IMG/VR virus record: IMGVR_UViG_3300020473_000011
Span: 124,001 to 188,000 of that record
Length of the DNA stretch: 64,000 nt
Reading direction: 5' to 3' (one strand)
Positions 20,224 to 34,415 of the stretch are shown here, in pieces; the first letter of the stretch is position 1; every line of letters begins with the position of its first letter. The translations under genes and the position numbers were made by a program. The notes under the pieces are model-generated. The model saw only the letters and a list, made by a program, of their open reading frames with translations, made no database searches and had not been told where the DNA came from.

Positions 20224-20235
20224 AGGCCAGCTCGT

Positions 20236-20688
20236 ATGTTAAAGCCATTAAAGGGCGACTTACTACAGTTTGCTGAGCATGGTTACTTTGATGTGGTCGT
20301 CCATGGGTGTAATTGCTTCTGTGAAATGGGCGCTGGGTTTGCCTATGCAGTAAAGACCCAGTACCCGAAAGCCCATCGGGCAGATAGGCAAACACTCAGG
20401 GGTGATCGTAACAAGCTTGGAACCTATACCAGTGCCAATGTCGGTCACTTTATTATCGTAAATGCGTATACCCAGTATCATTTTGAGGGAGAAGGCCAGC
20501 GTTTTGACTATGATGCTCTTAGAGACGTCATGAAACGCATCAAACAGGACTTTTCTGGTAAACGCATAGGTTACCCTCAAATTGGGGCTGGTTTCGCTGG
20601 TGGATGCTGGCGAGAGGCTTCAAAGATAATAAATAGGGAACTGAGAGGCGAAAAACACGGTGTAGTGGTCTTTCAGCGGCACAGATAG
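20236..20688 (+). CDS. Macrodomain (ADP-ribose processing) protein
   Basis: KGDLL, VVHGCNC...MGAGFA, NAYTQ, PQIGAGFAGG.W motifs. Confidence 0.9.
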   Translation: MLKPLKGDLLQFAEHGYFDVVVHGCNCFCEMGAGFAYAVKTQYPKAHRADRQTLRGDRNKLGTYTSANVGHFIIVNAYTQYHFEGEGQRFDYDALRDVMKRIKQDFSGKRIGYPQIGAGFAGGCWREASKIINRELRGEKHGVVVFQRHR

Positions 20689-20773
20689 CCCTTTTAGTGC
20701 CTTTTAGGGCTGTATAGACGGTGTTTTTCATGTAAAAGCCTGTGTTGCAGCCCTTTTAGTCTAAATTTAATCG

Positions 20774-20802
20774 TTGTACAATGATTTTTAGTGCGCTATA
20801 GT
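20774..20802 (+). promoter_or_regulatory. Sigma70-like promoter TTGTAC-N17-TATAGT
   Basis: The -35 lies inside the ATCGTTGTACAATGAT palindrome; same geometry at 21804, 22197 and 29316 (-). Confidence 0.75.
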
Positions 20803-20848
20803 GCCAAAACGAATCAAACATTCATTATTAACCAAGGGATAGATCACC

Positions 20849-21493
20849 ATGACTGAAAAAGACATGAATGATAGCTGGTTTAGTTATTTCCACAACCAAG
20901 CAACGGCAGCGCCACCAAATGGTACCCGTGTTCTTTATCCGTGGTTACACGGACGTGCTCAAGTAGAGTACACGATAACAGGTGCCCAAGAGCAAGGCGG
21001 CACAACTGCCTACAACATCACGTGCACGCATGTACCACGTGGCGATAGTAGCGCGTCGGTCGGTACACAGTACTCGGTACCACTCAAGTCGCTATACCCT
21101 ATAGACTACCATGACCCAGCTGCGATAGCCGTAGCTGATCAGTCTGCACCTAAAGTAGCGCTTTACCGTGTAATTGATGGTAAGCCCTTTATGCCACTGT
21201 ACTACAAGATAAACCCAACGACCGCGCTTGAGGAACTTGTACTTATTACACCTAACTATGAGTATGAGACCGAAGTCGTCACAATCCCGAATGAAGAACT
21301 TGCTGAGCGCCGCTTAGCTACCCGCTTTGTATGGGGAACGTCTGACGGGGCTGCCATTGCCAGTGCCCGTGCCAAACAAAGCGCCCTTAACGCAATGCAC
21401 GCTAAACGTATTGCTGATGAAGTAGCACGCCAACAAGGTATTGCTGCTGAGTGGATAGCCTCTATTAAAACGGTGAACAACCATGAAGTATGA
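20849..21493 (+). CDS. Hypothetical protein
   Basis: 214-aa ORF downstream of a promoter. Confidence 0.7.
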   Translation: MTEKDMNDSWFSYFHNQATAAPPNGTRVLYPWLHGRAQVEYTITGAQEQGGTTAYNITCTHVPRGDSSASVGTQYSVPLKSLYPIDYHDPAAIAVADQSAPKVALYRVIDGKPFMPLYYKINPTTALEELVLITPNYEYETEVVTIPNEELAERRLATRFVWGTSDGAAIASARAKQSALNAMHAKRIADEVARQQGIAAEWIASIKTVNNHEV

Positions 21494-21737
21494 TAATGCG
21501 GATGCAGTCGCAACTAAAATCGCGGTATCGTCACTGCTGGTGGGTGCAACTAAGAAAGCATTCGACATGGGCTTTGAGCAAATGCTGGCGGGTAAGGGTT
21601 GCATGACACAACAGGTCTTTTTCAGTTCTCTTAACTATGCAGGTCTGCGTAACTACCATAAGAAGACACTGTGGTCGGCCTATAAGTCAGGACGTTTCGA
21701 AGCACAGGTTGCGTTTGACCTTAAAACGAAGGTTTAG
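21483..21737 (+). CDS. Hypothetical protein
   Basis: 84-aa overlapping ORF. Confidence 0.6.
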   Translation: MKYDNADAVATKIAVSSLLVGATKKAFDMGFEQMLAGKGCMTQQVFFSSLNYAGLRNYHKKTLWSAYKSGRFEAQVAFDLKTKV

Positions 21738-21803
21738 CACTGGCCTGCTCTACTGCGTGCGTCGTTAATCACTACGGCGCAGCACTTTTCTTTAAAATAA
21801 TCG

Positions 21804-21832
21804 TTGTACAATGATTGTGTTTCAGCTATAGT
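21804..21832 (+). promoter_or_regulatory. Sigma70-like promoter TTGTAC-N17-TATAGT
   Basis: Read directly from the sequence. Confidence 0.75.
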
Positions 21833-21870
21833 GACCCTAAATCACTAATAATTACCGTAGGAACACTACC

Positions 21871-22041
21871 ATGCACATCGTTAGAGCCTTTGAAGAAGCA
21901 ACTAAGAGCCGTGACGCACTTGTCAGCAAGTTAACTAAGTTATCAATGGACGCTGCTGCGGCTGGCAACAAGGAACTACTCGACACATACCAAGAACTTA
22001 TCAAAGATGCGAACGCTATCATTGCGCCGTTCACTGAGTAG
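21871..22041 (+). CDS. 56-aa helical protein
   Basis: Not in the track. MHIVRAFEEATKSRDALVSKLTKLSMD...PFTE with its own promoter, AGGA RBS and a terminator at about 22064-22091. Confidence 0.7.
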   Translation: MHIVRAFEEATKSRDALVSKLTKLSMDAAAAGNKELLDTYQELIKDANAIIAPFTE

Positions 22042-22196
22042 TTAAGGCACCTAATAGCATAGAGAGGCGGGCACAAGTTGCTCGCCTTTTTGGTTTTAGG
22101 CCACCAGCACCTAGGCTTATACTAGGTAACTACTGAATAACCACCCTATTTTCACCTAATCCCCTGTCCCGCAGTTATTTATATCGAATAAAATCG

Positions 22197-22225
22197 TTGT
22201 ACAATGATTTATAAGCTGGTATAGT
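22197..22225 (+). promoter_or_regulatory. Sigma70-like promoter TTGTAC-N17-TATAGT
   Basis: Read directly from the sequence. Confidence 0.75.
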
Positions 22226-22264
22226 GGTCTCAAGTTAAGAATTGAACTACAGAGACCACTAGCA

Positions 22265-22633
22265 ATGATAAACCTTATTCCTACAGCACTAACAGTATTT
22301 GGCCGTGAAGCCGTACAAGCCCGTATCAAAGCAGGTGAGCGTCCTTCGGATATTCAGTTAGACGCGTTTGATCAACGCGATGCTACAATAAAAGCTTTGT
22401 TTGAGGCTATCGAATCTAACTTACCAAAGGGCACTTACTGTTCTGAGGCTGACCACCAACTTACCGTTGATGTCCGTAACGGTGAAGATATGGACGCAGC
22501 GCTGGCTAAGTTGAATGAGCTGGTGGAAACACACGGTCAGTTATTCAAGAAGCGCGGTTGTTCTTTCCAGCTCGTTGAGACCTTTGCTAACGTGACGATG
22601 TTTGAACTTAACTACAATAGAGACCACAGCTAA
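22265..22633 (+). CDS. Hypothetical protein
   Basis: 122-aa ORF downstream of a promoter. Confidence 0.7.
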   Translation: MINLIPTALTVFGREAVQARIKAGERPSDIQLDAFDQRDATIKALFEAIESNLPKGTYCSEADHQLTVDVRNGEDMDAALAKLNELVETHGQLFKKRGCSFQLVETFANVTMFELNYNRDHS

Positions 22634-22911
22634 TGACTGAACTATCAAAAGAACTGAATGACCTAGAAGCCTCAGCAAATGAAAAGGCAGAGGCATTCGC
22701 TACCAGTGAGAAGTGGGCAAAGCTTACTAATGGCCAAAAGAACCTACTTGCTTTGCTGGTGGATGCAGGTCAGTACGCAAACATTGAAGATGCAGCCTAT
22801 CAATTACGAACAAGTGTACAGTGGGTTCATCGCCATGCGTTAGGACTATCAGCGCTGGGACTTGCACGCCGTGAACTATCAAGCGGTCAGATCTGGTTAG
22901 CAGGTGCATAA
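22633..22911 (+). CDS. Winged-HTH-like protein
   Basis: LTNGQKNLLALL...IEDAAYQLRTSVQWVHRHALGLSALGLARR. Confidence 0.6.
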   Translation: MTELSKELNDLEASANEKAEAFATSEKWAKLTNGQKNLLALLVDAGQYANIEDAAYQLRTSVQWVHRHALGLSALGLARRELSSGQIWLAGA

Positions 22912-23352
22912 ATGCGTAAGTTGTTCATAGGCGCAGCACTGGCGTCAGTTTCTTTTCTTGGTTATTACAATGTGACCAACTACCAGTATGCGGAGAATAC
23001 CGAGTATGTCGGTACGGTAGTCAGTAAACCCCAGCCTGTGTGGGCGCGTTCAGATAAGCCTCACTATGGGAAGCACTACCATGTGAGCGTCGACTTTAAC
23101 GGCATCGGTGTGCAATCAGTGAATGTACCTTACAAGCAATATACGCAGCTAAAGACAGGTGATGTCTATCGTGTAAAACCGAAGTACTGGCCAGTCGTAG
23201 GTATCTTTAATTTTGAAGGAACACCGCAGGCCGCTGACAACCCTGCCCTTCACAAGACTAACGTACTCTTAATGCTGACGAGCCTACTCGTTCTAATAAT
23301 GGGTGGATTCTTTGTCGGGATATTAGGGCTGTTCAAGTATCTTGAGGACTAG
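22912..23352 (+). CDS. Membrane protein (two TMs flanking a beta domain)
   Basis: N- and C-terminal hydrophobic segments; Y.QLKTGD. Confidence 0.7.
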   Translation: MRKLFIGAALASVSFLGYYNVTNYQYAENTEYVGTVVSKPQPVWARSDKPHYGKHYHVSVDFNGIGVQSVNVPYKQYTQLKTGDVYRVKPKYWPVVGIFNFEGTPQAADNPALHKTNVLLMLTSLLVLIMGGFFVGILGLFKYLED

Positions 23353-23410
23353 CGTTAAGTTCATGTTGGTTATATACTGGCCAAGCTAATTGAGACTTTG
23401 AGGAACTACT

Positions 23411-23755
23411 ATGAGAACACGTGCAGGCCAACTACTGGCTAATATCAAACCACACCTAACCGAGAAAGCTGGTGGCATTATCGCTGACCTTAAAGCCCTC
23501 GGACTTACTATCAGTGATGAAGACACCCATGGCCGTCAGTGGTTCGAGCTTGATGCTGACCATAGACATAACCCTATTCACGATGTATTCCTAAAGAACG
23601 GCTGGCGCTTGACCTTCAATGGTAATGTGGCTGGTGGTGTTAAGCAGGCTGCTTATCAGCATGACGCGTTCGGCGGGGGCAATGCAGTGCTGCACTTTAA
23701 ACAGAATAAGGTCTACTTCCTGACTGTTAACTTTAAGCGTGATTACCGCGACTAA
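23411..23755 (+). CDS. Hypothetical protein (possible internal head protein)
   Basis: GAGGA RBS; N-terminus MRTRAGQLL...LTE. Confidence 0.7.
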   Translation: MRTRAGQLLANIKPHLTEKAGGIIADLKALGLTISDEDTHGRQWFELDADHRHNPIHDVFLKNGWRLTFNGNVAGGVKQAAYQHDAFGGGNAVLHFKQNKVYFLTVNFKRDYRD

Positions 23756-23770
23756 TCCCTTTGCAGAAAT

Positions 23771-23866
23771 AAAAAACCCGCGAATCACTCAAGGCTGGGA
23801 GCCTAAAGGTCGCGGGCATTAACTAACCGCGTTACTGGCCGACCGATAAACTAGCCAGCAACGAGC
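23771..23866 (-). ncRNA. Putative sRNA 3
   Basis: Minus-strand promoter TTGCAG(23899-23894)-N17-TATCAT(23876-23871); 11-bp 5' hairpin with G-U pairs and loop UUUAUCGGU; terminator CCCGCGA...TCGCGGG-TTTTTT. Confidence 0.65.
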
Positions 23867-24125
23867 ACTCATGATACTTCAACGACTTACCCACTGCAAG
23901 CCCCTACCATACTGTATGCGCAATACTTAAACACGTCCCGTAAGTATGTACTAGCGTACTTGCATACCCTTAGCCTAAAGTCCATAACCCTTTTCGACTC
24001 TTTTGTACTATTTCGTAAATGACAACGCTAGCCTAAACTGTTACAGTACAGGGCATTAGGTTGTGGATTAACGTGGGCTGAATTGTCACACTTGTTCACA
24101 GTACGTGAGTTAAAGGGGAACACTG

Positions 24126-24659
24126 GTGGTTCAAAAGCAGCTTCAAGGGTTTATCGAGAGCTTAGCTGACCAGTACAACTGTGACGAAAAAGTCATAGAG
24201 GTCATTGAAACATTTGCGCAGGAATTAACAGGCCAGCAAGTCGCTGACGTTATCAAGAATCTCGCCGAGCGTGACATCGTCGTGCCTGTCGAAATACAGC
24301 GCCCTGAGTGGCAGCGGCAGGTGCTACTAAACCGACAGGGCGCAGTCATCATCAACAATACAGGGCGAGCTATCGCAAGCAGCGCCGACTTATTTGAAGT
24401 CAAAGACTATGCGCACCTCGTTGGCCTGTGTAACGAACTAGGTTTCGAGCATTCGAGCATCACGAATACGCGAATGCTTGAGAGTGAGGCAACGCGCACA
24501 GAAGCGATTGTCTATGAGCTGACCTTCCGCACGGATGGCTACTACCTACTCCAAGGACATGTGTGGGTTCATAGCAACTTCGCAGACCTAGCTGAAAGAC
24601 TTAGCCAGTTCGACCCTCAAAACAACACACTCTTAACCAAAGACGACGGTACCAGCTAG
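24126..24659 (+). CDS. Hypothetical protein
   Basis: 177-aa ORF with an AAGGGG RBS; last gene before the non-coding repeat region. Confidence 0.7.
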   Translation: MVQKQLQGFIESLADQYNCDEKVIEVIETFAQELTGQQVADVIKNLAERDIVVPVEIQRPEWQRQVLLNRQGAVIINNTGRAIASSADLFEVKDYAHLVGLCNELGFEHSSITNTRMLESEATRTEAIVYELTFRTDGYYLLQGHVWVHSNFADLAERLSQFDPQNNTLLTKDDGTS

Positions 24660-26772
24660 GCGTCACGCCTACTTACTAAACCAAACTTGATACCTCTTAG
24701 ATTTACCTGCGTAGCACAGACGTGCTCGCGCGTGTGTCACGTAATCACGCCCACTACAAAGCAAACCCGATCACACTCGCCTCAATAAAGCTAACTATAC
24801 CCGCATGACCTCGGGTCAGAGTGCTAAGCGAACCGCAATTCGTTGTACAACACTTTCGTTTTTATAGTGGTATATACCCTGCCCTGTCCTCGGGTCAGAG
24901 TATAGAGAAGCTTTCGGGTGCCCTTTACGAACTTCCTACTGCCCCACCGATATTAGATAAACGCCTGTTTAAAGGTCACTATAGTGGTTCTTTGGCTTTC
25001 CGTAAGTGACCCGAGGTCACTTAGCTGTGGTAGTGGACTCGTATAAGCAGGTCTTAGTGAACACTGTACAACGTTTTATCTGTCGGATCGTAAGGCTAGC
25101 ACTCGGCTAGCTGCGCCTTCTCGACACTGCGGTTAACTAAGGGGTGCTTGTAATACATGGGGATGTGACCCAAGGTCAGGCTCAAAGGTCGAGGTGAGGG
25201 TCAACAGTCTCACCCAACTGGCAGCGTTGTACAAGCATTGCCTAAACCCCTGCGCCGCAGTGGGCTAATTTTTCGTACCGACGATGTGAGGGTTGAGGCG
25301 ACCGTACGCCAGAAAAACCTTTAATTTCATACAAACTCTATATGTATACGCCTAGACACACTGCAAAAGTAGGCGTCATGGTGTCGGCTGAACGGTTTAT
25401 TTTGGGTTACACACTGCGGCACAGGGGATTTCGTTGAATCAGAGTGTTAGGCAAAGTGAGCTAATACCTTATGTAGCAGGGGTATAGAGTGGAACCATAA
25501 TGACAACCCCTCGCTTCGCTCGGTTTAATCACGGCTTAGTCGCAGCTTTAATTACTAGTTTCCGTCGGTTCAGTAACGTTTTTGATGGCGGTTAGGGTTG
25601 TGCTGTTACTGATATTAGATGTGCATTGGTGCGTAGTCTGCTACTCATTAGTGGTTCTGCTTGTCGATTAGTGAGTAGAGTGTTACTCATAGTGAGAAGC
25701 TATTTGTGCCTATCTATTTACATTAATGGTTCTAGTATTGCTCTCTTGCTGTCTAGTTGTGGTCTTATAGTTGCGTCAGTTAATGGTGCTGGTTTGCATT
25801 CTCTGGTTTTACTTGGCGTTACTGAGTGTCTACTTTGGTTGCAAATATGATGCACGGTTATCGCATTGCTTGTATTGCTTGAGTGTATGTAGTTATGTAT
25901 AGGGGAAATGCAAACAGGGTTTTACTAACTTTCTAGTGTTGCAGTGATATTCCGCAACTGGGTAGTTGAACCTCAGTATAGGAAAAAGTGCGTGTGACCT
26001 CGGGTCATATTGGGGTGTTTTGTGTCTACTTTTGCGATTCTAGACACTGATTTCGGTCTGACCTCGGGTCATGGGTCACTATTTAGCGGTGTATTGTACA
26101 ATGCTTTGGGGTTGTGCCCTCGGGTCAGATAACCTTTAACTATATAGGTTTCTTGCCGAATCTCGGTATAACCGCACTGGCGGCGGCAGGTTAATAACAG
26201 TAGCGATGCCGCTTGTTAGTTCATAGTGTGACGTGGAATGTTTATAGTGAGCTTTATATGTGGTCGTACATTAATAGTAACGTGTATGTATACGTATATA
26301 GAATGAATAGTAGAATGTCTGGAATAGCTTATAGTAATAGGCTTGTATGTATCTATAGAATGTAATGTATATGTGCATACTAATATTATGTATGTGTACA
26401 TGTGTAATATAGTAGATGTAGTTATAGTGTCTATAGTGAGCATAGTGTTGTTCATAGTATTTATGTTCTTACTGAGGCAATGAGTTATCGACTATCCTGT
26501 GCGGGCGCGCAAGTGTTCTTTCTTTTTAGTGGAAGGTGGCTGCTTTCTTGTGTTGGCCTGCCCTCGGGTCAGGGTGCTTGTGGGTGTTCTTTTCGTTGTA
26601 CAATGGATTTTGACTGTCCTGTGCGGGGCGCTGCGGGCTTTTCTCGTATGAAGATGAGTGCTTGTGTGGGTTTTACTTTTTAGATGGCTTGTGGGGCGTC
26701 TGAGGGCGTTTTTACGTTTTTGAGGGGGTGTGGCGACTATCCTGTGCGGCCGCCAAGCGGAAGTAGAGGCGC

Positions 26773-27150
26773 TTAACGCGTCTCTACTGAGTTATTTTCT
26801 TGTTCTTTACTATCTATCTCTTCGAGCAGCGCCTCAAGGTAAGATAGGCGGAACGCAGCGCGTATGTCGTCCATCTTGAAGTCTAGCGCGCATAACTTGG
26901 TGAACAACTCGCGATGCTCGGTTACGAACTCACGTGTTAGCTCAATCGTATTTGAAATCATAGAAAGCACATACCCATCTACTAGTTCTAGATTGTCACC
27001 GATGTGCGTCATTAACTCGGCTTTCTTACCTGTGTTATGTAACGTGGCAATTTCAGTCATAAGTTTCCAGCGCGCTTCGCGTTGCTCTTCTGTTAGTTCC
27101 TGATTAGGCACTGTTATCGTATCGGTCGTCATAGTGTGGTTAGTCTCCAT
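26773..27150 (-). CDS. Hypothetical protein
   Basis: 125-aa ORF, last gene of the minus-strand operon. Confidence 0.65.
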   Translation of the reverse strand: METNHTMTTDTITVPNQELTEEQREARWKLMTEIATLHNTGKKAELMTHIGDNLELVDGYVLSMISNTIELTREFVTEHRELFTKLCALDFKMDDIRAAFRLSYLEALLEEIDSKEQENNSVETR

Positions 27151-27340
27151 GTGTTAGTAGTTCGTTTACGGCTTCTTCGGCAGCTACTATTACGGCGTGT
27201 TCGTTCTGGGTGTATTCATTATCGTACTCGCCGTCTAGGCCGCTTACCCATTCTTGCCATTCCGCTTCCGCAATCTCCTGATCTATCCTGTGCGAGGCGA
27301 AGATGCTTAACCATTTATCTTTGTAGTTACTTACGTGCAT
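27140..27340 (-). CDS. Small acidic hypothetical protein
   Basis: 66 aa, AAGG RBS. Confidence 0.6.
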   Translation of the reverse strand: MHVSNYKDKWLSIFASHRIDQEIAEAEWQEWVSGLDGEYDNEYTQNEHAVIVAAEEAVNELLTHGD

Positions 27341-27342
27341 TG

Positions 27343-27642
27343 TTACGCTACCTTACCCGTTTGAATATACGCGTCGATGGCTTCTTGTTGAGTCTTGGCG
27401 CAACAGCCTTCACCCATACCGATTATCTCGCGCATCGCCTCTGATTCGCCTAACGTACAATAGTGGTTATCACCGTCAGTCTTTAATAAAGAGCAGGGCG
27501 CTGTTGTTTGGCCAGTTACGGTCTTACCGACTGAGCATACTTCCGTTAAGCAGCAATACCCGCAGTGATTACAGGCTTGACCATATTTAGGCTTGCGCTC
27601 GACGGCGACCGTCATGACTTTAATTAAGTTACCTTTAAACAT
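27343..27642 (-). CDS. CxxCxxCC (YkgJ-like) metal-binding protein
   Basis: CNHCGYCC...PCSLL...YC...GCC. Confidence 0.7.
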   Translation of the reverse strand: MFKGNLIKVMTVAVERKPKYGQACNHCGYCCLTEVCSVGKTVTGQTTAPCSLLKTDGDNHYCTLGESEAMREIIGMGEGCCAKTQQEAIDAYIQTGKVA

Positions 27643-27662
27643 GAGTCTGTCCTCGGGTCAGA

Positions 27663-27932
27663 TTATTTAAGTGGGGTGGCTGAGAAGATTGGCTCGTACT
27701 CACGCTCTACTGTAAAGATACCTCGGCTCACACCTGTCGCATCAAAGATTTGAACTGTGCATGGCCAGCTTGCTTCATGGCCGTCATTGTCGTGATAGTG
27801 TTCTGCTGCGGCCTCTGCTACATACTGTGGGTACTCTTCAATATCCCAGTGTGTTAGGAAGCTGTCATCAGGCTCGTGATCGGGTTTGTCATTGTAGGGG
27901 ATGCTAAAGCCATATTTGTTTTCGTTGCTCAT
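27663..27932 (-). CDS. Acidic hypothetical protein
   Basis: 89 aa, AAGGA RBS. Confidence 0.65.
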   Translation of the reverse strand: MSNENKYGFSIPYNDKPDHEPDDSFLTHWDIEEYPQYVAEAAAEHYHDNDGHEASWPCTVQIFDATGVSRGIFTVEREYEPIFSATPLK

Positions 27933-28073
27933 TGTCTTCCTTTCTCTCTGACCTCGGGTCAGATTATTTATGACTGTCCTGTGCGGGGCGCTATCTCTTG
28001 GCGTCTGCCCTTGGGTCAGACCAGTCTAGTTTCGATTAGGGAGTTTGACCCGTCTGTCCTCGGGTCAGAGTAT

Positions 28074-28307
28074 TTACTTGATGTACTGCCTGATATGGCC
28101 GTCTTTGCACAGGGCTGTTAGATTACCCAGTTCGTCGAAGGCAAAGGCATGTACTTCAACACCAGCGCCTTCCTTACTATCTTGCTTGGTGATTTTACCA
28201 CCGCGAAGGTGTCTAGCCTTTAAGTAGGTTGCCAGCTTTTTGTCACTTACCCATTTCTCATCAAGCCCTTGTAGCGCTTCCTCAATTACCTGTGCTGTTA
28301 CTTTCAT
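28074..28307 (-). CDS. Hypothetical protein
   Basis: 77 aa, AAGGA RBS. Confidence 0.65.
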   Translation of the reverse strand: MKVTAQVIEEALQGLDEKWVSDKKLATYLKARHLRGGKITKQDSKEGAGVEVHAFAFDELGNLTALCKDGHIRQYIK

Positions 28308-28350
28308 AATCCTTAACCTATCTACTTAGAGTTAGATGCCTGCCCTCGGG

Positions 28351-28842
28351 TCAGACCGACTGTCCTGTGCGGGCGGCGCGTTGCGCTTTACTTCGTTGTA
28401 CAATGTTTCTTAGTGGGTCACGTAAGTCTATGACTACAGGGGCAAACTCGATGCACTCGAAGTCATGTACCCACTGTACGTTATCACCTAAATCAAGAGT
28501 GGCCTGTGTACGTTTTGCAACGACACTCACAAGATTCTTTGCATGGTCAGCATCTAAGTCCACATAATGGCCAAAGAAGCCGTCCTTTTCTATGCGGCCT
28601 GTGTAGGCTATGTAGTACTTGCCCGCAGTCTCCGCCATTTCGCGAACAGTGACAGTCCCGACTTCAACCAGTGTAAAGGTACCTATAGGGAAACTTGGGC
28701 GGTCAAATTCATCACTCGATACATCTTTAGGCACAAGTGCTCTATAAGTCTGACCCGCGTGGCACCGCGCAAACTCTTCATCGAAAAGTGCAGAGAGTAG
28801 CCGCCTGTCATCAGTGACCTTAATAACGGTTATCGTAGACAT
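28351..28842 (-). CDS. Hypothetical protein (paralog of 28870..29340)
   Basis: TITVIKVTDD...HAGQTYRA...FPIGTF vs TITHIKVTSD...HAGKTYRA...FPVGTF. Confidence 0.75.
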   Translation of the reverse strand: MSTITVIKVTDDRRLLSALFDEEFARCHAGQTYRALVPKDVSSDEFDRPSFPIGTFTLVEVGTVTVREMAETAGKYYIAYTGRIEKDGFFGHYVDLDADHAKNLVSVVAKRTQATLDLGDNVQWVHDFECIEFAPVVIDLRDPLRNIVQRSKAQRAARTGQSV

Positions 28843-28869
28843 GTGGTGTTATTCCTCTAGTGGACGCTA

Positions 28870-29253
28870 TTAACAAAACCAAGCAGGGGCGTACGCGTTT
28901 TCCCAGACAATTGCTGAGTTAGTTTCGCCCGCCACATCAACAGCAATCTCAAAGGCGTCAACACCCTCAAGCTCGTCAGTCTGGTCACTGAAACCAAAGT
29001 CGTCGGCGCTGCCTTCGAATGACACTTCGTAAAGCTCTTCTTCGTCGTGCATTTCAGTGATGATCACCTTACCTGTCGAAAGGTCTTCGAAAGTACCCAC
29101 TGGGAACTTAACTGTTGAGCACTCAGCCCAACCATCGTTTAAAACGGCACGGTACGTCTTACCTGCATGCTGTTCAGCGTAAGTAGCATCCCATACACGG
29201 GTTAAGGCTTCTTTGTCACTGGTTACCTTGATGTGGGTAATTGTTTTGTACAT
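28870..29253 (-). CDS. Hypothetical protein (paralog of 28351..28842)
   Basis: Start placed at MYKTIT because the TTGTAC-N17-TATAGT promoter lies at 29316-29288. Confidence 0.7.
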   Translation of the reverse strand: MYKTITHIKVTSDKEALTRVWDATYAEQHAGKTYRAVLNDGWAECSTVKFPVGTFEDLSTGKVIITEMHDEEELYEVSFEGSADDFGFSDQTDELEGVDAFEIAVDVAGETNSAIVWENAYAPAWFC

Positions 29254-29433
29254 AGTGTCGGTCTCATTTATATCGGTTAATGAGGCCACTATAGCAGCTT
29301 GATAATCGTTGTACAACGTTTTTATTTGGTTTAATTCCACTGTGGGGCAGGGGTTTTCGTGACTGTCCTGTGCGGGGCGCAGTAGGGCTGAATGTCAATG
29401 GTGCAGGCTGTCTGACCCGCACTCATTTTTTAT

Positions 29434-29775
29434 TTAGGCAGGCATGTCCTCTTCGATGATCAGAAGCTCATCATCAGGACAAAGCGCTGACACATCGTCG
29501 AGCTTACCCAGCTGCTTCGCGTCGTAAAGGTCTGTTAGTGGGCAACCTGTCATACCGACGGGCAGTACCTGACCCTTTTCCGAATAGAGATAGCTCACAA
29601 ACGGTGTCGACGTGCCTTTCGTCGTAATCTCGTAGATAGCAAAGCTGCCATGAATACTATCGTCGTCTGTAGGAATACGCACACGGTTACCGAACTTGAT
29701 CAGTGTTCCTGTGCTGTCACAAAACCCTGTGCACTGCTCCGCTGTATTACTCGTCATGTGTGTCACCTTATTCAT
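29434..29775 (-). CDS. Hypothetical protein (YopX-like start)
   Basis: EQCTGFCDSTGTLIKFGNRV resembles the YopX QxTGxxDxxGxxIxEGD motif. Confidence 0.5.
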   Translation of the reverse strand: MNKVTHMTSNTAEQCTGFCDSTGTLIKFGNRVRIPTDDDSIHGSFAIYEITTKGTSTPFVSYLYSEKGQVLPVGMTGCPLTDLYDAKQLGKLDDVSALCPDDELLIIEEDMPA

Positions 29776-30109
29776 ATAAAGGGGCTAAGTTGTTACGGGC
29801 TTCGGCTTTACGGATAGCTTCTGCTGCTCTTTCGGCGCTTAGGAAAGCATCTTCATCCATCGCACCGCTCTGTGCATAGGATGCAGCTACCTCTTCGCGT
29901 ACAGCATTAAATTCATTAAGCGTCAGTTTTACGTATTGGGTCTTACTAGCCCTGACGCGGTCTTCCTGATCGGGCTTGGTGTTGGCCTTATTCTTGACAT
30001 AGAATTTAGGTGCTCTAAGTTTTGACATACATAGCCCCTTATTTATAAACCATTGAGTAACGCGGGATGTAACCATAGCCACCTGTTGGGATGTATACTC
30101 GGCGGCCAC
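29768..30109 (-). CDS. Hypothetical protein
   Basis: Likely start at MSKLRAPK. Confidence 0.55.
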   Translation of the reverse strand: MAAEYTSQQVAMVTSRVTQWFINKGLCMSKLRAPKFYVKNKANTKPDQEDRVRASKTQYVKLTLNEFNAVREEVAASYAQSGAMDEDAFLSAERAAEAIRKAEARNNLAPLYE

Positions 30110-30332
30110 GAAAGCCTGCTTCTTCTGCTGCGTCTCTAATGCGAGACTTCCACGTGTTGTGGCTCAGGGTGATAGCGTTATCCTCGCTGAACTCTTCCGC
30201 AAGTTCTTGGTTATTTGCGTCAAGACCTTCCCAGCCCTTGCCATTCTCACTGCGCTTTCTTGCTGCCCAGTCGACTAACCACTGGATCTGTTCTTTCTTT
30301 GATGTTGGCTTTCTGCCATCGTATGCGGTCAT
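30039..30332 (-). CDS. Hypothetical protein
   Basis: 97 aa, AAGGA RBS. Confidence 0.6.
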   Translation of the reverse strand: MTAYDGRKPTSKKEQIQWLVDWAARKRSENGKGWEGLDANNQELAEEFSEDNAITLSHNTWKSRIRDAAEEAGFRGRRVYIPTGGYGYIPRYSMVYK

Positions 30333-30340
30333 GATAGTCC

Positions 30341-30604
30341 TTATAAAGGGGTTAAGTTGAGAAAGGCTGCATTGTCATTAATGCCACGCTCTCGTGCAAT
30401 TTTGTTAACAAGCTTAGCAAAGAGTGGGCTTGGTATATCACTCGCTTTGAGTGTCGCCATTTGATCACAATAACGGCACATGAAGTGCACGGAAGGCGGC
30501 ATCGTGTTTGACTCGCGAAAGTCATCAACTGCTAGACCCGTGCGCTGTGCACCACACTCGTTACAGGTGGCATTGATGGTCGGTATTCCAATCTTTAAAC
30601 TCAT
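30341..30604 (-). CDS. Zn-ribbon-like protein
   Basis: CNEC...CRYC. Confidence 0.6.
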   Translation of the reverse strand: MSLKIGIPTINATCNECGAQRTGLAVDDFRESNTMPPSVHFMCRYCDQMATLKASDIPSPLFAKLVNKIARERGINDNAAFLNLTPL

Positions 30605-30612
30605 TGGCTGCT

Positions 30613-30885
30613 CTAAGGTTTTGTTTTATCCACCCAGCCTTCACTAAGTCCCAAGAACTTAGTTAGACCACTCTTGGCATCTTGTACACGCTTATAGCTG
30701 CGGCCGTCTGAGCCGAACCAGCCATCATAGCTTTGGGTACCGTTATGGCGGTTAGCTGGGTCTACACGCAACCTAAAACCATCATGAGCGCTTCGAATGC
30801 TAAAGGTCTCATCATCACATTTTAGTTCTAGGTGTACATGTTTAGACATTTTCTTTACCTGTTTTGATAGCGATTGGCACCACAC
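30613..30885 (-). CDS. Hypothetical protein
   Basis: Likely start at MSKHVH. Confidence 0.55.
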   Translation of the reverse strand: MWCQSLSKQVKKMSKHVHLELKCDDETFSIRSAHDGFRLRVDPANRHNGTQSYDGWFGSDGRSYKRVQDAKSGLTKFLGLSEGWVDKTKP

Positions 30886-31411
30886 TAAATGTTCCCGTCA
30901 TACAGCTCGTACCATGATGGCCGACGGGGGCTGTATCTAGATAATCCGATAGTTCATCAGACACCACAAAATCCTCTTTGAAAGACAACGGGATCTGATC
31001 TTGCCAGCGCTCCATTGCGATACGGTCTTGCTCGGCTAAGTCTTTATCAAAGTAAATCGCTAGCCTTATAGGGCACTCTACATCACTACAGTACAAAGCG
31101 TAAACCTCTGGTGCACGTAACCCCTTAGCGAGGCCGTGGTAGTACTCTTTCATTGCTGGGAGTACGTCAGCCAGCGACAGGTGCTGTTCTGGGCAGCGCA
31201 CAAGTCCACTTGTAAACTCCTGCACAGCTGCAACTTTCACGGCAGTAGGGTTGTTTACGTTGGCCTCTACTTGAGCCTGTAGTGCGACTACGGTGCTTTG
31301 TAGCATGTCTACGTGGTCAAGTATGTCCTGAGCTTCTGCCCCCGTTAGGCGTATACCCATCCACGTATCGACGCTTACTTGGTGTCTTAATTTTTCTAGG
31401 CCGTTTTGCAT
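30842..31411 (-). CDS. Hypothetical protein
   Basis: 189-aa coupled ORF. Confidence 0.65.
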   Translation of the reverse strand: MQNGLEKLRHQVSVDTWMGIRLTGAEAQDILDHVDMLQSTVVALQAQVEANVNNPTAVKVAAVQEFTSGLVRCPEQHLSLADVLPAMKEYYHGLAKGLRAPEVYALYCSDVECPIRLAIYFDKDLAEQDRIAMERWQDQIPLSFKEDFVVSDELSDYLDTAPVGHHGTSCMTGTFSVVPIAIKTGKENV

Positions 31412-31644
31412 CAGTGCATTACCTTGTTATCTTTGCTTGGCGGCGCGCTAAAGCGCTCGTCCAGTTCTTTATCTTCGGCACCAGCCATCCAACTACGAAG
31501 GCGATGCCACTTTTCTTCGGTGCAGCTTTCGCACTGCTCGTAGTAGAATGCTTCTTCTGCGGTCATCGTCGCGCCACAATGACAGGGCGTCGGCAAGTAA
31601 TCGCGTTCGAACTCTTTTAGGGTTTGCTTATTCTTTGTTGCCAT
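31411..31644 (-). CDS. Small Zn-finger-like protein
   Basis: CHC...CESC. Confidence 0.6.
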   Translation of the reverse strand: MATKNKQTLKEFERDYLPTPCHCGATMTAEEAFYYEQCESCTEEKWHRLRSWMAGAEDKELDERFSAPPSKDNKVMH

Positions 31645-32005
31645 CAGCTTTCTCGTTTAGGCCAGCTAGAATTTCGCTGATACGTTCACGTAAGTCACAT
31701 TTGCCGTTCTCACTATCAATAAGAGCCATGCCAAGGTAACAGGCCATGGCCGTGTTAGCTGAACGCTTGATCTCGTCATGGTTCGACATATAAGCATTAC
31801 AAAAAGAATCAAAGCGCTCTACAATTTCAGGAAGGGCAGCCTCTGCGTTAAACTTGGCAAGGATAGGCAGTAAGCCCCACTCATCGTCAGGTACGTGCTG
31901 ATGTGAAATGTTTGAATCTGCTATGCTGTTACTCATTAATACACTGCTCCGCGCTGGCGTCGACGAGTTGGTCGAGTTTGTTGTTACGGTGTGCCTCATC
32001 GACAA
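31628..32005 (-). CDS. Hypothetical protein
   Basis: Likely start at MSNSIA. Confidence 0.55.
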   Translation of the reverse strand: MSMRHTVTTNSTNSSTPARSSVLMSNSIADSNISHQHVPDDEWGLLPILAKFNAEAALPEIVERFDSFCNAYMSNHDEIKRSANTAMACYLGMALIDSENGKCDLRERISEILAGLNEKADGNKE

Positions 32006-32513
32006 TGCGTTTGTAGATGTCTTGGCCTACCTTACTTTTAGATACACGCAGATTCATTAACGTTGCCATAGCCTGATCGTATTTATGAGCATCTATCAGC
32101 GGTTGTATTTCTTGCATACAAATAGCGTGTAGTTCTTCGTATGCCTTACCCAGTGACAATAAGTTATTATTCACCGCGTCAATGGCAGCGCTTAACTTAC
32201 GACGTTTGACGTAGCTATCGAACTCGTACATATCAATAATGTGTAGGTCATCAGTATGACCCTTACAGCGTACCTTTAAGCGATTGTCATTTATCAAAAC
32301 ATAGTAGAACTCAAGCTCTGCCCAAGTAACTGTTAGGACTGTCTTATTAACGGGGTAGCCACTTAGTATCTGTGACCAAGTAGCGTTAGGCGACTCATTA
32401 AAGAGGGTACGCAGCGCGGCCTCTTTGTCGAACTCATCTATTTTCATTAGCCTCTCCAAACTGAGGTGATTGTCTATTCCGATGCCGATGGCCTCTTCGA
32501 AATTAGGTTCCAC
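31929..32513 (-). CDS. Hypothetical protein
   Basis: 194-aa ORF. Confidence 0.65.
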   Translation of the reverse strand: MEPNFEEAIGIGIDNHLSLERLMKIDEFDKEAALRTLFNESPNATWSQILSGYPVNKTVLTVTWAELEFYYVLINDNRLKVRCKGHTDDLHIIDMYEFDSYVKRRKLSAAIDAVNNNLLSLGKAYEELHAICMQEIQPLIDAHKYDQAMATLMNLRVSKSKVGQDIYKRIVDEAHRNNKLDQLVDASAEQCINE

Positions 32514-33058
32514 TAAAGCGCCTCTTCGGGGATCTGAATATCAGACGTTTGCCCGAATTTACTCGAAACCATTGGCACATGTAAATGGCGTATTACGATT
32601 GGCAGCGACGTACGGAAGTCAAACACACACTGTGTGACATCCTTTGGTATCTCTCCGCCGTCACGTGTGGTGAAGACTTCGTCAATACCACGATGAATGC
32701 TCACAAGCTCATACGACTGACCATCATCCGCTTTAACGTACTTAAATTCGAAGCAGGCTTTTGAATGGGCTTCTATAACCTGACCGCCAAACAGTTCGAG
32801 TTCTTCTTCCATTCTCGCGTTGATGATTGTGTACACGATAGAAAGCTCGTCCGTCATTTTACCGTGCTCGTAGTTGACGTGAATACGTTGGTCGGCTGTG
32901 CTGATAATATCGGGGCGTATCGCACGGCTGCTGTAGTTAAACACGTGGTAAGTGTGCTCGTAGTTAACTACGCTTGAGCTGTCCAGCGTGTTTTGGATAA
33001 CTGTTGCATTTACGTCGTTTGGCAGCTGAAATCGAAATCGTAGGGTCGTTGCGTCCAT
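32513..33058 (-). CDS. Hypothetical protein
   Basis: 181-aa ORF, GAGGA RBS. Confidence 0.65.
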   Translation of the reverse strand: MDATTLRFRFQLPNDVNATVIQNTLDSSSVVNYEHTYHVFNYSSRAIRPDIISTADQRIHVNYEHGKMTDELSIVYTIINARMEEELELFGGQVIEAHSKACFEFKYVKADDGQSYELVSIHRGIDEVFTTRDGGEIPKDVTQCVFDFRTSLPIVIRHLHVPMVSSKFGQTSDIQIPEEAL

Positions 33059-33060
33059 GG

Positions 33061-33288
33061 TTAGTCCTCGTGTTGGCGCTGGTTGTGTAGCGCGATAATC
33101 TTTTCAGCTTTCATCACCACGTCGTTAGGGCGCTGGCCACTTAACGACATTGCGTGTACGGTTGCTATCGGTGCCGTTGTAACAGTGCTGTACGTAAAGG
33201 CACGCGTGCCAGCAAAGCTCTCTTTCAGCGCTTCCTCACTCGCTAATACGTTACCACCGTCTAGGTCAATGTATATCGTTGTACTCAT
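33061..33288 (-). CDS. Hypothetical protein
   Basis: 75-aa coupled ORF. Confidence 0.55.
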   Translation of the reverse strand: MSTTIYIDLDGGNVLASEEALKESFAGTRAFTYSTVTTAPIATVHAMSLSGQRPNDVVMKAEKIIALHNQRQHED

Positions 33289-33485
33289 AGCTGATTTACC
33301 TTTGCTTCTGGGTCTTTACGACCACCGTGACCACCATACTTACAATCGGTACACTCCAAGGATGTCTGGTATTCGCAGTCAAACTCTCGCGTCCATTCAT
33401 CCGTATAGCCGAGGCACTTAGGATGTTTTGCAGGTACTGAGGTGTCCAAGCTGGGCAAGATCTCGCTTAATAGGCGGTTCTTCAT
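33285..33485 (-). CDS. Small Cys-rich protein
   Basis: C...C...CTDC. Confidence 0.55.
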   Translation of the reverse strand: MKNRLLSEILPSLDTSVPAKHPKCLGYTDEWTREFDCEYQTSLECTDCKYGGHGGRKDPEAKVNQL

Positions 33486-33598
33486 TATTTGGGTCTCGGT
33501 CTCTATTATTAAATTTTAGTATCGCTGGTAAGATAGCAGACGTTTGTTTAAGTTACAAGCGTTGTACAACGAAAAGTTCTGTGGGACAGTCAATTTGG

Positions 33599-33805
33599 TT
33601 AAATTGCGGGCATGAAGACGCCACCACAGTAGCGGGTGGTCAGGTCGTTAATGAGTGCTTGCTCAGAGGGGGTTATTTTCGGGTGGTCTACGTACCGCCA
33701 GCGAGTTTCATACATCTGTATTGCATGGTCTGGCCGAATGTAGCGACCATGCTGATCCCACAGCAAGGAATCCAGCTGCGTGTATAGCTTGCGGTCAATC
33801 AGCAT
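33599..33805 (-). CDS. Small protein resembling partners of AbiEii-type nucleotidyltransferase toxins
   Basis: QLDSLLWD...AIQMYETRWRYVD...SEQALINDL...GGVF matches my recollection of the YERNWRHVD family; no search was run. Confidence 0.55.
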   Translation of the reverse strand: MLIDRKLYTQLDSLLWDQHGRYIRPDHAIQMYETRWRYVDHPKITPSEQALINDLTTRYCGGVFMPAI

Positions 33806-33808
33806 TCG

Positions 33809-34213: not shown

Positions 34214-34415
34214 AGCGATGTCTTATCGGTTTTTCTAAGTACGGGTAAAAAGAGTGATTGTACAACCAATTTGGGCAAATGGTATTAAACCAACCAGTTG
34301 TACAATCACTTAAATAAGATGAGCGCCACCCTTGTTTATCCAGTAGGGAACAAACAATGGTTTGGTTCTGGTTGGGAACTATGTCTCATCTTATCCCTAA
34401 GTATCTCTCGGTGTC

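What the first reader, a model, noticed from the sequence alone, without database searches (positions are those of the whole stretch)
26490..29380. Strictly oriented GACTGTCCTGTGCGGGGCGC repeats interleaved with small genes
Seen: six non-palindromic copies plus one partial, all on the + strand. They recur in composite units with CCTCGGGTCAG and/or CGTTGTACAA (26559-26630, 27949-27991, 28341-28404, 29309-29380), often at gene boundaries. Inference: polar sites (Ter-like fork traps, KOPS/Chi-like or injection signals), or recombination handles that shuffle small gene cassettes. The adjacent paralogs 28351 and 28870 fit local duplication.
Basis: partly seen in the sequence, partly recalled or inferred. 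Interest (0 to 1): 0.6.

Follow-up and report, generated by a model that had tools for sequence, protein, structure and literature searches.

The report
Conserved directional box in megaphage spacers
The repeat is real: a 16-21 bp signal that always points the same way as the local genes and is conserved across five related ~420 kb marine phages. Three copies lead into the most easily melted DNA of the genome, so it is most likely a protein-binding control site (possibly a replication origin), not a chromosome-style polarity signal.

Summary
The core GACTRTCCTGTGCGG occurs six times plus one partial copy, all on the + strand, at 26490-29380; chance expects about 0.

The window lies in a 281.5 kb piece of a ~419.5 kb marine myovirus. 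That record holds exactly nine boxes: seven here and two at genome 83.1 kb on the other strand. All nine run the same way as the local genes.

Read on the coding strand, the box is SSS-CCCGCACAGGAYAG-(TC|AT). It sits at the same intergenic places in five lineages whose proteins are only 53-72% identical. The accompanying 15-bp palindrome, in contrast, changes sequence lineage by lineage.

Three boxes spaced 121-130 bp end the small-gene operon. They abut the least stable, most purine/pyrimidine-alternating and most C-depleted stretch of the whole record. This lies in a 2.1 kb gene-free gap with no RNA contigs in one metatranscriptome.

Two gene gains or losses between lineages end at boxes; one does not.

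Best reading (0.35): binding sites for one sequence-specific protein, iteron-like beside an unwinding element, which also act as PeSL-like crossover points. A specialised promoter or an RNA-level signal remain rivals. Ter, KOPS and Chi are not supported.

The parts
26490..26510 (-). Box 1 of the tandem array. It is the last box before the unstable stretch and reads GCGCGCCCGCACAGGATAGTC on the - strand.
   Evidence: 31.0 bits. Syntenic copies in L029, L033 and L027.
26612..26631 (-). Box 2 of the tandem array, an exact 20-mer. A TTGTACAA box follows 10 nt later on the - strand in all lineages.
   Evidence: 32.8 bits.
26735..26754 (-). Box 3 of the tandem array, starting 24 nt after the stop codon of the 119-aa gene.
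   Evidence: 29.3 bits.
27280..27300 (-). Degenerate box D. Here it lies inside the 66-aa ORF; in relatives L027 and L033 the same place is intergenic and carries a full box.
   Evidence: 24.3 bits.
27972..27991 (-). Box C, an exact 20-mer. On the - strand it is followed by 9 nt of A/T, then a palindrome, a ribosome-binding site and the ATG of the 89-aa gene.
   Evidence: Homology with L033 and L030 resumes here.
28358..28377 (-). Box B (2 mismatches), lying in the last codons of the 163-aa ORF and followed 3 nt later by a palindrome.
   Evidence: 32.1 bits. Present only in the WIN and L029 lineages.
29361..29380 (-). Box A, an exact 20-mer. It lies 53 nt after the stop of the 107-aa gene and about 45 nt upstream of a sigma-70-like promoter.
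   Evidence: Syntenic in all five lineages.
26558..26572 (.). 15-bp palindrome of the CTGNCC-TCG-GGTCAG family, in the spacer between boxes 2 and 1.
   Evidence: Replaced at the same place by CTGACAAGATGTCAG in L027 and CTGACACGGAGTCAG in L033.
27647..27661 (.). Palindrome directly in front of the 99-aa gene; it includes the GAGG of the ribosome-binding site.
27948..27962 (.). Perfect palindrome CTGACC-TCG-GGTCAG between box C and the 89-aa gene.
28005..28068 (.). Two further palindromes (28005-28019 and 28054-28068) after the 77-aa gene.
28340..28354 (.). Palindrome 3 nt from box B; it overlaps the stop codon of the 163-aa ORF.
26213..26480 (.). Extreme A+T-rich stretch with alternating purines and pyrimidines and very few C on the + strand; a candidate DNA unwinding element.
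   Evidence: least stable duplex of the 281 kb at window sizes 100, 200 and 300 (z 5.1-6.2), highest alternation (z 5.3), lowest C content (0.068). The same adjacency to box 1 is seen in L027 and L029.
24660..26772 (.). The largest gene-free gap of the record (2113 bp), between 23 genes on the + strand and 21 genes on the - strand that converge on it.
   Evidence: Conserved blocks shared with L027. No metatranscriptome contigs over 25185-26563.
26762..26788 (.). Strong hairpin spanning the stop codon of the 119-aa gene, conserved in all lineages.
29288..29316 (-). Sigma-70-like promoter of the 127-aa gene: TTGTACAA as the -35 element, a 16-17 nt spacer, then TGcTATAGT.
   Evidence: Conserved in L029, L033, L028 and L030.
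26596..26603 (.). TTGTACAA box in the array. Further copies lie at 28396-28403 and 29309-29316. This is the commonest intergenic motif of the genome.
   Evidence: 149 copies against about 5 expected.
26773..29757 (-). Small-gene operon carrying the boxes: 119 aa (26773-27132), 66 aa (27140-27340), 99 aa (27343-27642), 89 aa (27663-27932), 77 aa (28074-28307), 163 aa (28351-28842), 127 aa (28870-29253) and 107 aa (29434-29757).
   Evidence: My own gene caller agrees with the genes called on the identical contig L026. No informative Pfam or PHROG hits.

Best explanation
The repeat is one strand of a 16-21 bp box. Read on the - strand, which is the coding strand of the local genes, it is SSS-CCCGCACAGGAYAG-(TC or AT). 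I take it to be the recognition site of one sequence-specific DNA-binding protein, probably phage-encoded.

Three boxes, 121-130 bp apart, close the small-gene operon and lead straight into the least stable stretch of the genome (about 270 bp, alternating purines and pyrimidines). This lies inside a conserved, gene-free gap that appears untranscribed. That layout matches iterons next to an unwinding element, meaning a replication origin or a comparable DNA-level assembly site.

The four other boxes in the window lie in or near the spacers ahead of individual small genes. Two of them (B and C) are followed within 3-9 nt by a 15-bp palindrome. There the same protein would tie expression of those genes to its occupancy.

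Because the boxes are long, near-identical repeats in the same sense, they also act as homologous crossover points for gain and loss of small genes, as PeSLs do.

Shown: existence, copy number, orientation, conservation at syntenic places, adjacency to the extreme DNA, and two indel ends at boxes. Inferred: protein binding, origin function and regulatory coupling.
For: - The family is sharp and high in information: nine hits of 24-33 bits, then nothing above 14 bits in 281 kb. This is typical of a dedicated binding site rather than a broad promoter class.
- The boxes sit at the same places in five lineages.
- Boxes are conserved far above their spacers: 45/48 against 152/233 identical versus L027 (p 2e-5), and 43/48 against 147/234 versus L033 (p 1e-4).
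- In a 98% identical strain the array region has diverged about 10%, yet boxes 2 and 3 are unchanged and box 1 has a single change.
- The three-box array and its 121-130 bp spacing are kept in four lineages.
- The stretch next to box 1 ranks first in the whole record for duplex instability, alternation and C depletion. The same adjacency holds in L027 and L029.
- The gap is the largest gene-free region of the record and has no RNA contigs in a metatranscriptome that covers the flanking genes at 26-93x.
- RNAalifold finds no conserved structure involving the boxes, so they act as linear sequence.
- The second cluster lies directly after a 329-aa HTH protein gene.
- Indel ends fall at boxes.
Against: - No initiator family (Rep_3, phage O) and no DnaA boxes were found, though a third of the genome was not searchable.
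- The 121-130 bp spacing is far wider than classical iterons and not in constant helical phase (11.6 versus 12.3 turns).
- The spacers themselves carry conserved elements (a TTGTACAA box and a palindrome), so each unit is more than a bare binding site.
- The region is a convergent junction, not a divergent one.
- Strict co-orientation with genes in both clusters fits a transcription-coupled signal at least as well.
- No binder has been identified; the HTH link is adjacency only.
- The RNA evidence comes from contigs of one sample, which cannot show strand or transcript ends.
Confidence: 0.35

Rival explanations
1. The box is a specialised promoter, recognised by a phage factor or phage polymerase. 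It launches - strand transcripts for the small genes. From box 1 it also launches a transcript into the unwinding element, as the middle-mode promoter plus unwinding element do at the T4 origins oriF and oriG.
For: - All nine copies run with the genes.
- The order box, short A/T spacer, palindrome, ribosome-binding site, ATG is kept at site C in four lineages, with 40-48 nt from box to ATG.
- Conserved homology blocks start exactly at the box.
- The sequence after the box is A-rich and G-poor.
- An RNA contig reaches up to 29333, beyond the sigma-70 start site and just short of box A, with no RNA contig for 500 nt further upstream.
- Box 1 sits immediately upstream of the unstable stretch.
- A terminator follows the 83-kb boxes.
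Against: - There are no RNA contigs downstream of boxes 2, 1 or D.
- The box has no -10 or -35 resemblance.
- No phage RNA polymerase or sigma factor was found in the 281 kb.
- Five of the nine boxes have no ORF downstream.
- Nine copies are few for a promoter class in a 420 kb phage, while TTGTACAA (149 copies) looks like the general promoter element.
Confidence: 0.2
2. The box acts through or against transcription at gene ends. It could be a factor-dependent, orientation-dependent terminator or roadblock (like the Sal-box/TTF-I arrays behind rRNA genes), an RNA processing site, or a boxA-like partner of the following hairpin (nut-like).
For: - Boxes lie 6-25 nt after stop codons at seven of about twelve sites across the lineages.
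- A triple array at the operon end would shield the gap and the convergent operon.
- RNA contigs stop at box 2 (26627) and at box D (27283), with silence beyond.
- Box A precedes the next promoter, the place where a terminator would sit.
- A box plus a 15-nt hairpin resembles a nut site in layout.
Against: - One RNA contig runs unbroken through boxes B and C, and another through box 3, so these boxes do not terminate efficiently.
- There is no U-tract and no conserved RNA structure at the box.
- The palindromes occur in both orientations relative to genes, which fits DNA sites or loop-indifferent hairpins.
- Contig ends near boxes (3 of 16) are not more than chance.
Confidence: 0.15
3. The boxes have no function of their own. 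They are spread, homogenised repeats that persist as homologous crossover points between small-gene cassettes (purely PeSL-like handles or selfish repeats).
For: - The 77-aa gene is flanked by direct box-plus-palindrome modules.
- Two indels end at boxes.
- The palindrome family evolves in concert within each genome, as spreading repeats do.
Against: - The boxes stay nearly invariant at orthologous places while their spacers fall to 63-65% identity.
- Each of the three array boxes has its own conserved flanks, so they are ancient and not recently spread.
- A closely related strain is collinear.
- A gene swap occurs without any box.
Confidence: 0.08
4. The boxes are polar DNA signals of the kind the first reader proposed: Ter-like fork traps, KOPS/Chi-like skewed words, or strand-specific nick or injection signals such as those in T5 and phiKMV-like phages.
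For: The box is non-palindromic and the two clusters have opposite orientation, which a fork trap would also show. Strand-specific nick sites in some phages are similarly few, long and conserved; this rests on my own knowledge and was not tested.
Against: - Nine copies in two clusters of 0.3 and 2.9 kb do not form a genome-wide skewed word.
- No Tus family protein was found.
- Positions are tied to gene boundaries and kept gene by gene across lineages.
- Nicks could not be examined, because only contigs were available.
Confidence: 0.05

Closest known systems
PeSL cassettes (promoter-early stem-loop) of T4-type phages (PMC2839356, PMC4122927)
   Same: Both are composite, repeated intergenic modules in a region of small ORFan genes of a large myovirus. 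Both combine a sigma-70-like promoter element with a stem-loop or palindrome, and both are all in one sense. Indels between related phages end in the modules, and here one small gene is flanked by two of them.
   Different: PeSLs are defined by the promoter and a G/C stem-loop that terminates transcription. Here the most conserved part is an extra 16-21 nt linear box with no promoter resemblance. Only one of the seven modules has a full -35/-10 promoter, and the palindromes lack U-tracts. Three boxes form a gene-free array beside an extreme A+T stretch. Minicircles were not tested.
Iteron-plus-unwinding-element replication origins (lambda ori; P1, F, R6K and pSC101 plasmids; SPP1 oriL/oriR; T4 oriE). 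Recalled from general knowledge.
   Same: Both have several near-identical direct repeats of about 20 bp in one orientation next to the most easily melted DNA. Both have extra copies elsewhere in the genome (SPP1 has two box clusters far apart), sometimes near promoters.
   Different: The spacing here is 121-130 bp rather than about 22 bp, and the spacers carry other conserved elements. No initiator gene or DnaA box was found. The site lies at a convergent junction.
T4 oriF/oriG (middle promoter plus downstream unwinding element, R-loop priming). Recalled from general knowledge.
   Same: A directional signal that also precedes ordinary genes sits immediately upstream of an unwinding element.
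   Different: The box shows no MotA-box or -10 architecture. No RNA contigs were detected over the element. The predicted transcript would be G-free, which does not favour stable R-loops.
Sal-box/TTF-I terminator arrays and Tus-Ter (polar protein roadblocks). Recalled from general knowledge.
   Same: Both involve oriented repeats of about 18-23 bp arrayed behind a transcription unit, with one copy ahead of a promoter, and the action is polar.
   Different: No such protein was found here. RNA contigs cross three of the boxes. The analogues are eukaryotic or chromosomal systems.

Membership tests
PeSL (T4-type promoter-early stem-loop cassette) | Strong sigma-70-like early promoter (-35 and -10) inside each element | tested here: not met
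   Only the module at 29288-29316 has TTGTACAA, a 16-17 nt spacer and TATAGT. The modules at boxes B, C, D, 1, 2 and 3 have no -10 element at the right spacing.
PeSL (T4-type promoter-early stem-loop cassette) | Stable stem-loop that acts as a terminator or attenuator | tested here: inconclusive
   15-nt palindromes with a 5-6 bp stem are present and show paired changes between lineages. They have no U-tract in the sense direction, and one RNA contig crosses four of them.
PeSL (T4-type promoter-early stem-loop cassette) | Intergenic location, upstream of ORFans in a variable region | tested here: met
   small genes without family matches, with modules in the spacers between them.
PeSL (T4-type promoter-early stem-loop cassette) | Indels between related phages end in the elements | tested here: inconclusive
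   Two indels end at boxes (and inspection). One gene swap does not. A 98.4% identical strain is collinear.
PeSL (T4-type promoter-early stem-loop cassette) | Minicircles formed by recombination between neighbouring elements | not testable with these tools
   This needs inverse PCR or raw reads. Read laying reported no joints, but only contigs were laid.
Iteron-type replication origin | Three or more direct repeats of about 17-22 bp in one orientation | tested here: met
   Boxes 1-3 at 26490-26754, kept in four lineages.
Iteron-type replication origin | Adjacent A+T-rich unwinding element | tested here: met
   Window 26213-26480 is the least stable duplex of the 281 kb. The same holds in L027 and L029.
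Iteron-type replication origin | Close, helically phased spacing (about 22 bp) | tested here: not met
   Spacings are 122/123, 121/122, 130/129 and 129/129 bp.
Iteron-type replication origin | Cognate initiator gene and/or DnaA boxes | tested here: not met
   No Rep_3 or phage O family. No TTWTNCACA within 146-153 kb. About 138 kb of the genome could not be searched.
Tus-Ter / RTP fork trap | Contrahelicase protein encoded, and opposed site groups flanking a terminus | tested here: inconclusive
   The two clusters have opposite orientation. No Ter/Tus family protein was found. Seven sites lie within 2.9 kb and are tied to gene boundaries.
KOPS/Chi-type skewed oligomers | Many copies genome-wide with strand skew tied to replication arms | tested here: not met
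   Nine copies in 281 kb, in two clusters, with no degenerate copies.
Single-subunit (T7-like) RNA polymerase promoter | Cognate polymerase in the genome; a contiguous box of about 20 nt ending at +1; transcripts starting there | tested here: inconclusive
   A contiguous directional box is present. No PF00940 match was found, but that search's controls were silent as well. Transcript starts cannot be seen in contigs.
Known RNA families, tRNA, CRISPR-like array | Match to a curated covariance model or a regular repeat-spacer array | tested here: not met
   No Rfam hit at E up to 1 over 20000-34000. No tRNA. Spacings are 122-1003 bp and the box has no hairpin.

The most novel reading that the evidence does not exclude
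The boxes are sites of an undescribed phage protein that binds DNA in one orientation. At the three-box array this protein both ends - strand transcription and organises a new kind of replication origin for ~420 kb marine megaphages: widely spaced iterons, each with its own promoter-like box and palindrome, feeding into a 270 bp stretch of alternating purines and pyrimidines. This would be a bacterial-virus counterpart of polar terminator and fork-barrier arrays.
Probability: 0.12. Interest if true: 0.7.

Novelty: new variant of a known kind. Interest (0 to 1): 0.5.

Why it matters
Almost nothing is known about how uncultured phages of about 420 kb start replication or organise early transcription. 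This locus offers a compact and testable handle:
- one 16-nt box conserved across at least five lineages;
- a lineage-specific palindrome family that changes in concert;
- the single most meltable stretch of the genome.

If the array is an origin or a polar control site, it would be the first cis-element defined for this phage group. It would also be a useful landmark for read-depth replication analysis in metagenomes. In addition, the locus extends the PeSL idea, that regulatory repeats double as crossover points for small-gene turnover, beyond classical T4-like phages.

Tried and rejected
- **DNA similarity to known phages:** no match in INPHARED.
- **Motif scans of public collections:** IMG/VR gave nothing for the 20-mer or for a two-box pattern. 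The 20-mer in bacterial genomes gave two single hits, and in metagenomes one foreign single hit; all three lie in unrelated DNA of 56-64% G+C and are judged chance. The other metagenome hits were the same phage contig.
- **Protein-pattern searches in IMG/VR:** nothing for three proteins.
- **Known RNA genes:** no Rfam hit and no tRNA.
- **Conserved RNA structure:** RNAalifold on five sequences kept only the gene-end hairpin and the palindrome, nothing at the boxes.
- **Antisense-terminator idea:** 15 of 17 terminator-like hits are on the + strand. I rejected this because the T-rich tails are not conserved in L030 and L033.
- **N4-like hairpin promoter idea:** the 3061-aa protein has no PHROG or PDB match, so there is no support.
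- **Sigma-54, sigma-32, MotA-box and DnaA-box resemblance:** checked by eye and rejected.
- **Phage RNA polymerase, sigma, Tus, Rep_3 and phage O:** none found.
- **CRISPR-repeat mimicry:** an 11-nt resemblance to type I-C repeats, recalled from memory. Not pursued, because the box lacks the repeat's hairpin arm.
- **Extending the most divergent lineage:** gave no longer contig.
- **Literature search for TTGTACAA:** returned only cloning primers.
- **RNA contig ends:** three of 16 lie within 30 nt of a box, which is not more than chance.

Full report
**1.

The exact 20-mer GACTGTCCTGTGCGGGGCGC occurs at 26612, 27972 and 29361, with a 2-mismatch copy at 28358. All four are on the + strand, and 100 shuffles gave none. 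A 13-nt core with at most one mismatch gives seven + strand hits, at 26491, 26613, 26736, 27282, 27973, 28359 and 29362, against 0.18 expected. The companion motifs are also far above chance: CCTCGGGTCAG has 15 hits against 0.57, and CGTTGTACAA has 63 against 6.1. The two neighbouring genes are paralogs, but old ones, at 32% identity.

**2. Genomic setting**

The window is bases 124001-188000 of a 281,557-bp IMG/VR virus record that CheckV rates 67% complete.
- A 419,531-bp ENA contig is 100% identical over 12 kb, so the full genome is about 420 kb.
- The record encodes tail-sheath proteins and a gp5-like spike. Its best sheath match is only 39% identical, to Rhizobium phages.
- It has no DNA match in INPHARED.
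- It comes from marine metagenomes.

Genes from 26773 to 35501 are all on the - strand, and genes up to 24659 are on the + strand. The 2113 bp between them is the largest gene-free gap of the record. The repeat is therefore read on the - strand from here on. My gene calls agree with those on the identical contig.

**3. Copy number and orientation**

The 281 kb hold only two more copies, at genome 83100 and 83382. They are on the opposite strand, and there the flanking gene (329 aa, N-terminal HTH) is on the + strand. A weight matrix built from all instances gives nine hits of 24-33 bits; the next best is 14 bits. All nine run with the local genes. This is a small, sharp family, not a genome-wide skewed word.

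**4. Relatives**

No close relative exists in IMG/VR. Protein searches and exact-protein look-ups recovered four further lineages:
- L029: the 127-aa protein is 91% identical.
- L033 and L027/L028: 72% identical for the 127-aa protein; the 119-aa protein of L027/L028 is 53% identical.
- L030/L031: 60% identical.
- In addition, L025 is a 98.2% identical strain.

In all lineages the box lies in the same sense at the same places:
- ahead of the promoter of the 127-aa gene;
- ahead of the 89-aa gene;
- between the 99-aa and 119-aa genes;
- as three copies after the last gene.

The consensus is SSS-CCCGCACAGGAYAG-(TC or AT), followed by A-rich, G-poor sequence.

Box columns are much better conserved than the spacers of the array: 45/48 against 152/233 identical versus L027 (p 2e-5), and 43/48 against 147/234 versus L033 (p 1e-4). 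In strain L025 the array region has diverged about 10% while the flanking genes differ by about 0.3%. Even so, boxes 2 and 3 are unchanged and box 1 has one change.

The 15-bp palindrome behaves differently, changing lineage by lineage:
- CTGACC-CGA-GGNCAG in the window and L029;
- CTGACA-CGR-AGTCAG in L033;
- CTGACA-TCT/AGA-TGTCAG in L027;
- GTGCCC-CGA-GGTCAC in L030.

The paired stem positions change together. That fits either an RNA hairpin or a dimer-binding DNA palindrome.

**5. The array and the extreme DNA**

Boxes 3, 2 and 1 follow the 119-aa gene at spacings of 122/123 bp. The spacings are 121/122 bp in L029, 130/129 in L033 and 129/129 in L027. Each box has its own conserved flanks, so the triplication is ancient.

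About 10 nt after box 1 begins the stretch 26213-26480. It is the least stable duplex of the 281 kb at three window sizes (z 5.1-6.2). It is also the most purine/pyrimidine-alternating 200 nt (z 5.3) and the most C-depleted 250 nt. The least stable 200 nt of L027 and L029 start 35-45 nt after their own box 1. No DnaA boxes lie nearby.

**6. RNA and strain evidence**

A 98.4% identical strain (run X2) is collinear over 24200-30100, so there is no recent reshuffling.

Contigs of a metatranscriptome (run X5) cover the flanking genes at 26-93x, and also 26627-26789. None covers 25185-26563, which includes boxes 1 and 2's downstream side and the unstable stretch.
- One RNA contig crosses boxes B and C, and another crosses box 3.
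- Contigs end at box 2 (26627) and at box D (27283).
- One contig begins 28 nt downstream of box A (29333).

Contigs show neither strand nor true transcript ends, and three of 16 ends near boxes is not more than chance. I therefore treat this as weak evidence. It does not cleanly fit either a promoter or a terminator.

**7. Gene turnover**

Compared with L033 and L030, homology stops after the 127-aa gene and resumes at window 27987 and 27993, the 5' edge of box C.
- The window and L029 carry 880 extra bp here: the 163-aa paralog and the 77-aa gene.
- The 77-aa gene is flanked by two box-plus-palindrome modules.
- The relatives instead have a TTGTACAA box and four or five tandem palindromes.

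The 66-aa ORF is present in three lineages and absent in two. The sequences part at the 3' edge of box D, judged by inspection. In contrast, L029 replaces an 86-aa gene by 280-aa and 68-aa genes in tight spacers with no box. The boxes are thus used as crossover points but are not required for turnover.

**8. What it is not**

- No Rfam family or tRNA.
- No conserved RNA fold at the box.
- No phage RNA polymerase, sigma factor, Tus, Rep_3 or phage O family in the 281 kb. About 138 kb could not be searched.
- The + strand terminator-like hits (15 of 17) are not conserved as terminators in the relatives.

**9. Interpretation**

The box is a linear, high-information, directional element under purifying selection. 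I rank a DNA-level recognition site first (0.35), for three reasons:
- the family is sharply bimodal;
- two of the boxes lie in or at the edge of a conserved zone without RNA contigs;
- the array abuts the most meltable DNA of the genome in every lineage that reaches that far.

That is the iteron-plus-unwinding-element layout, even though the spacing is unusual and no initiator is known.

The rivals rank as follows:
- A specialised promoter, including a T4 oriF/oriG-like promoter plus unwinding element (0.2). It explains the co-orientation and the box-spacer-palindrome-gene units well. It is weakened by the lack of RNA contigs downstream of three boxes and by the absence of any polymerase or sigma factor.
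- A polar terminator, roadblock or RNA-level signal (0.15). It fits the position just after stop codons and the triple array at the operon end. However, RNA contigs cross three boxes.
- Pure crossover repeats (0.08). The conservation argues against this.
- Ter, KOPS, Chi or nick signals (0.05). These are mostly excluded or untestable here.

The closest described system is the PeSL cassette of T4-type phages (PMC2839356, PMC4122927). The locus works like it in cassette turnover, but it fails the defining promoter feature in six of seven modules.

**10. Limits**

- The gene calls for the whole record come from a simple caller of my own.
- The RNA evidence is from contigs of one sample.
- All functional statements are inference.

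Noticed in passing
whole record; in the window e.g. 20774, 21804, 22197, 29309: TTGTACAA (extended consensus aaATCGTTGTACAAtGATT, palindromic) occurs 149 times in 281 kb against about 5 expected, and almost all copies are intergenic. Only 27 copies have a TAnnnT hexamer 16-18 nt downstream (9 of them TATAGT, often preceded by TGn). It is therefore the -35 part of a sigma-70-like promoter in a minority of cases and something else, perhaps an operator or activator site, in most.
   Followed up: partly
genome 83460-83500 (outside the window; locus L013:3460-3500): Three tandem copies of about 15 nt (ACGTGATCGACCTA-like) sit between two mutually inverted bidirectional terminators (GGGAGC-loop-GCTCCC). 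They lie just after the second 83-kb box and next to two HTH genes of 329 aa and 110 aa.
   Followed up: no
genome 84520-84615 (L013:4520-4615); also upstream of TTGTACAA at genome 86798 and 87623: The word ACGACTGCA is repeated four times in the divergent spacer beside the 110-aa XRE-type HTH gene. It recurs just upstream of several TTGTACAA boxes, so it is a candidate operator or activator site.
   Followed up: no
genome 82106-83095 compared with L034:4001-5071: The 329-aa HTH protein is only 47% identical to its counterpart in the L029 lineage, whose other genes are about 90% identical. Its last codons and the downstream boxes are nearly identical, however. The regulator gene is mosaic, with a crossover inside the gene, as seen in immunity-type regulators. 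Its 30-32% identical homologs lie in bacterial contexts (L036, L037).
   Followed up: partly
window 35835-36713 (+), 34416-35501 (-), 15446-16321 (+): The phage encodes a PAS-GGDEF diguanylate cyclase (E 7e-35), a C-5 cytosine DNA methyltransferase (E 2e-51) and a Thg1-like tRNA-His guanylyltransferase (E 1e-31).
   Followed up: no
window 25247-25512 and 26140-26175: Further conserved non-coding blocks lie in the gap. One is 71% identical to L027 over 266 nt. Another is an invariant GCGGTTATACCGAGA block. A separate part of the gap, 24944-25134, does have RNA contigs.
   Followed up: no
L027:29-245, L028:631-845, L033:1322-1485: In relatives that lack the 163-aa and 77-aa genes, the spacer holds four or five tandem units of about 48-56 bp. 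Each unit carries the lineage's own version of the 15-bp palindrome.
   Followed up: partly
genome 1-137 (left end of the record): There is a perfect tandem repeat with a 15-bp period at the very start of the 281 kb record. This may be an assembly-end artefact, since the 419.5 kb contig continues about 116 kb beyond this end.
   Followed up: no
genome 230609-239794 (L017:2609-11794, - strand): A 3061-aa ORF has no PHROG family and no PDB sequence relative.
   Followed up: partly
window 25800-26770 compared with L025 and L029: The non-coding gap is a hotspot of differences between near-identical strains, at about 10% against about 0.3% in the adjacent genes. Sites are shared in a mosaic pattern among the three strains, which suggests frequent recombination or fast evolution there.
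   Followed up: partly
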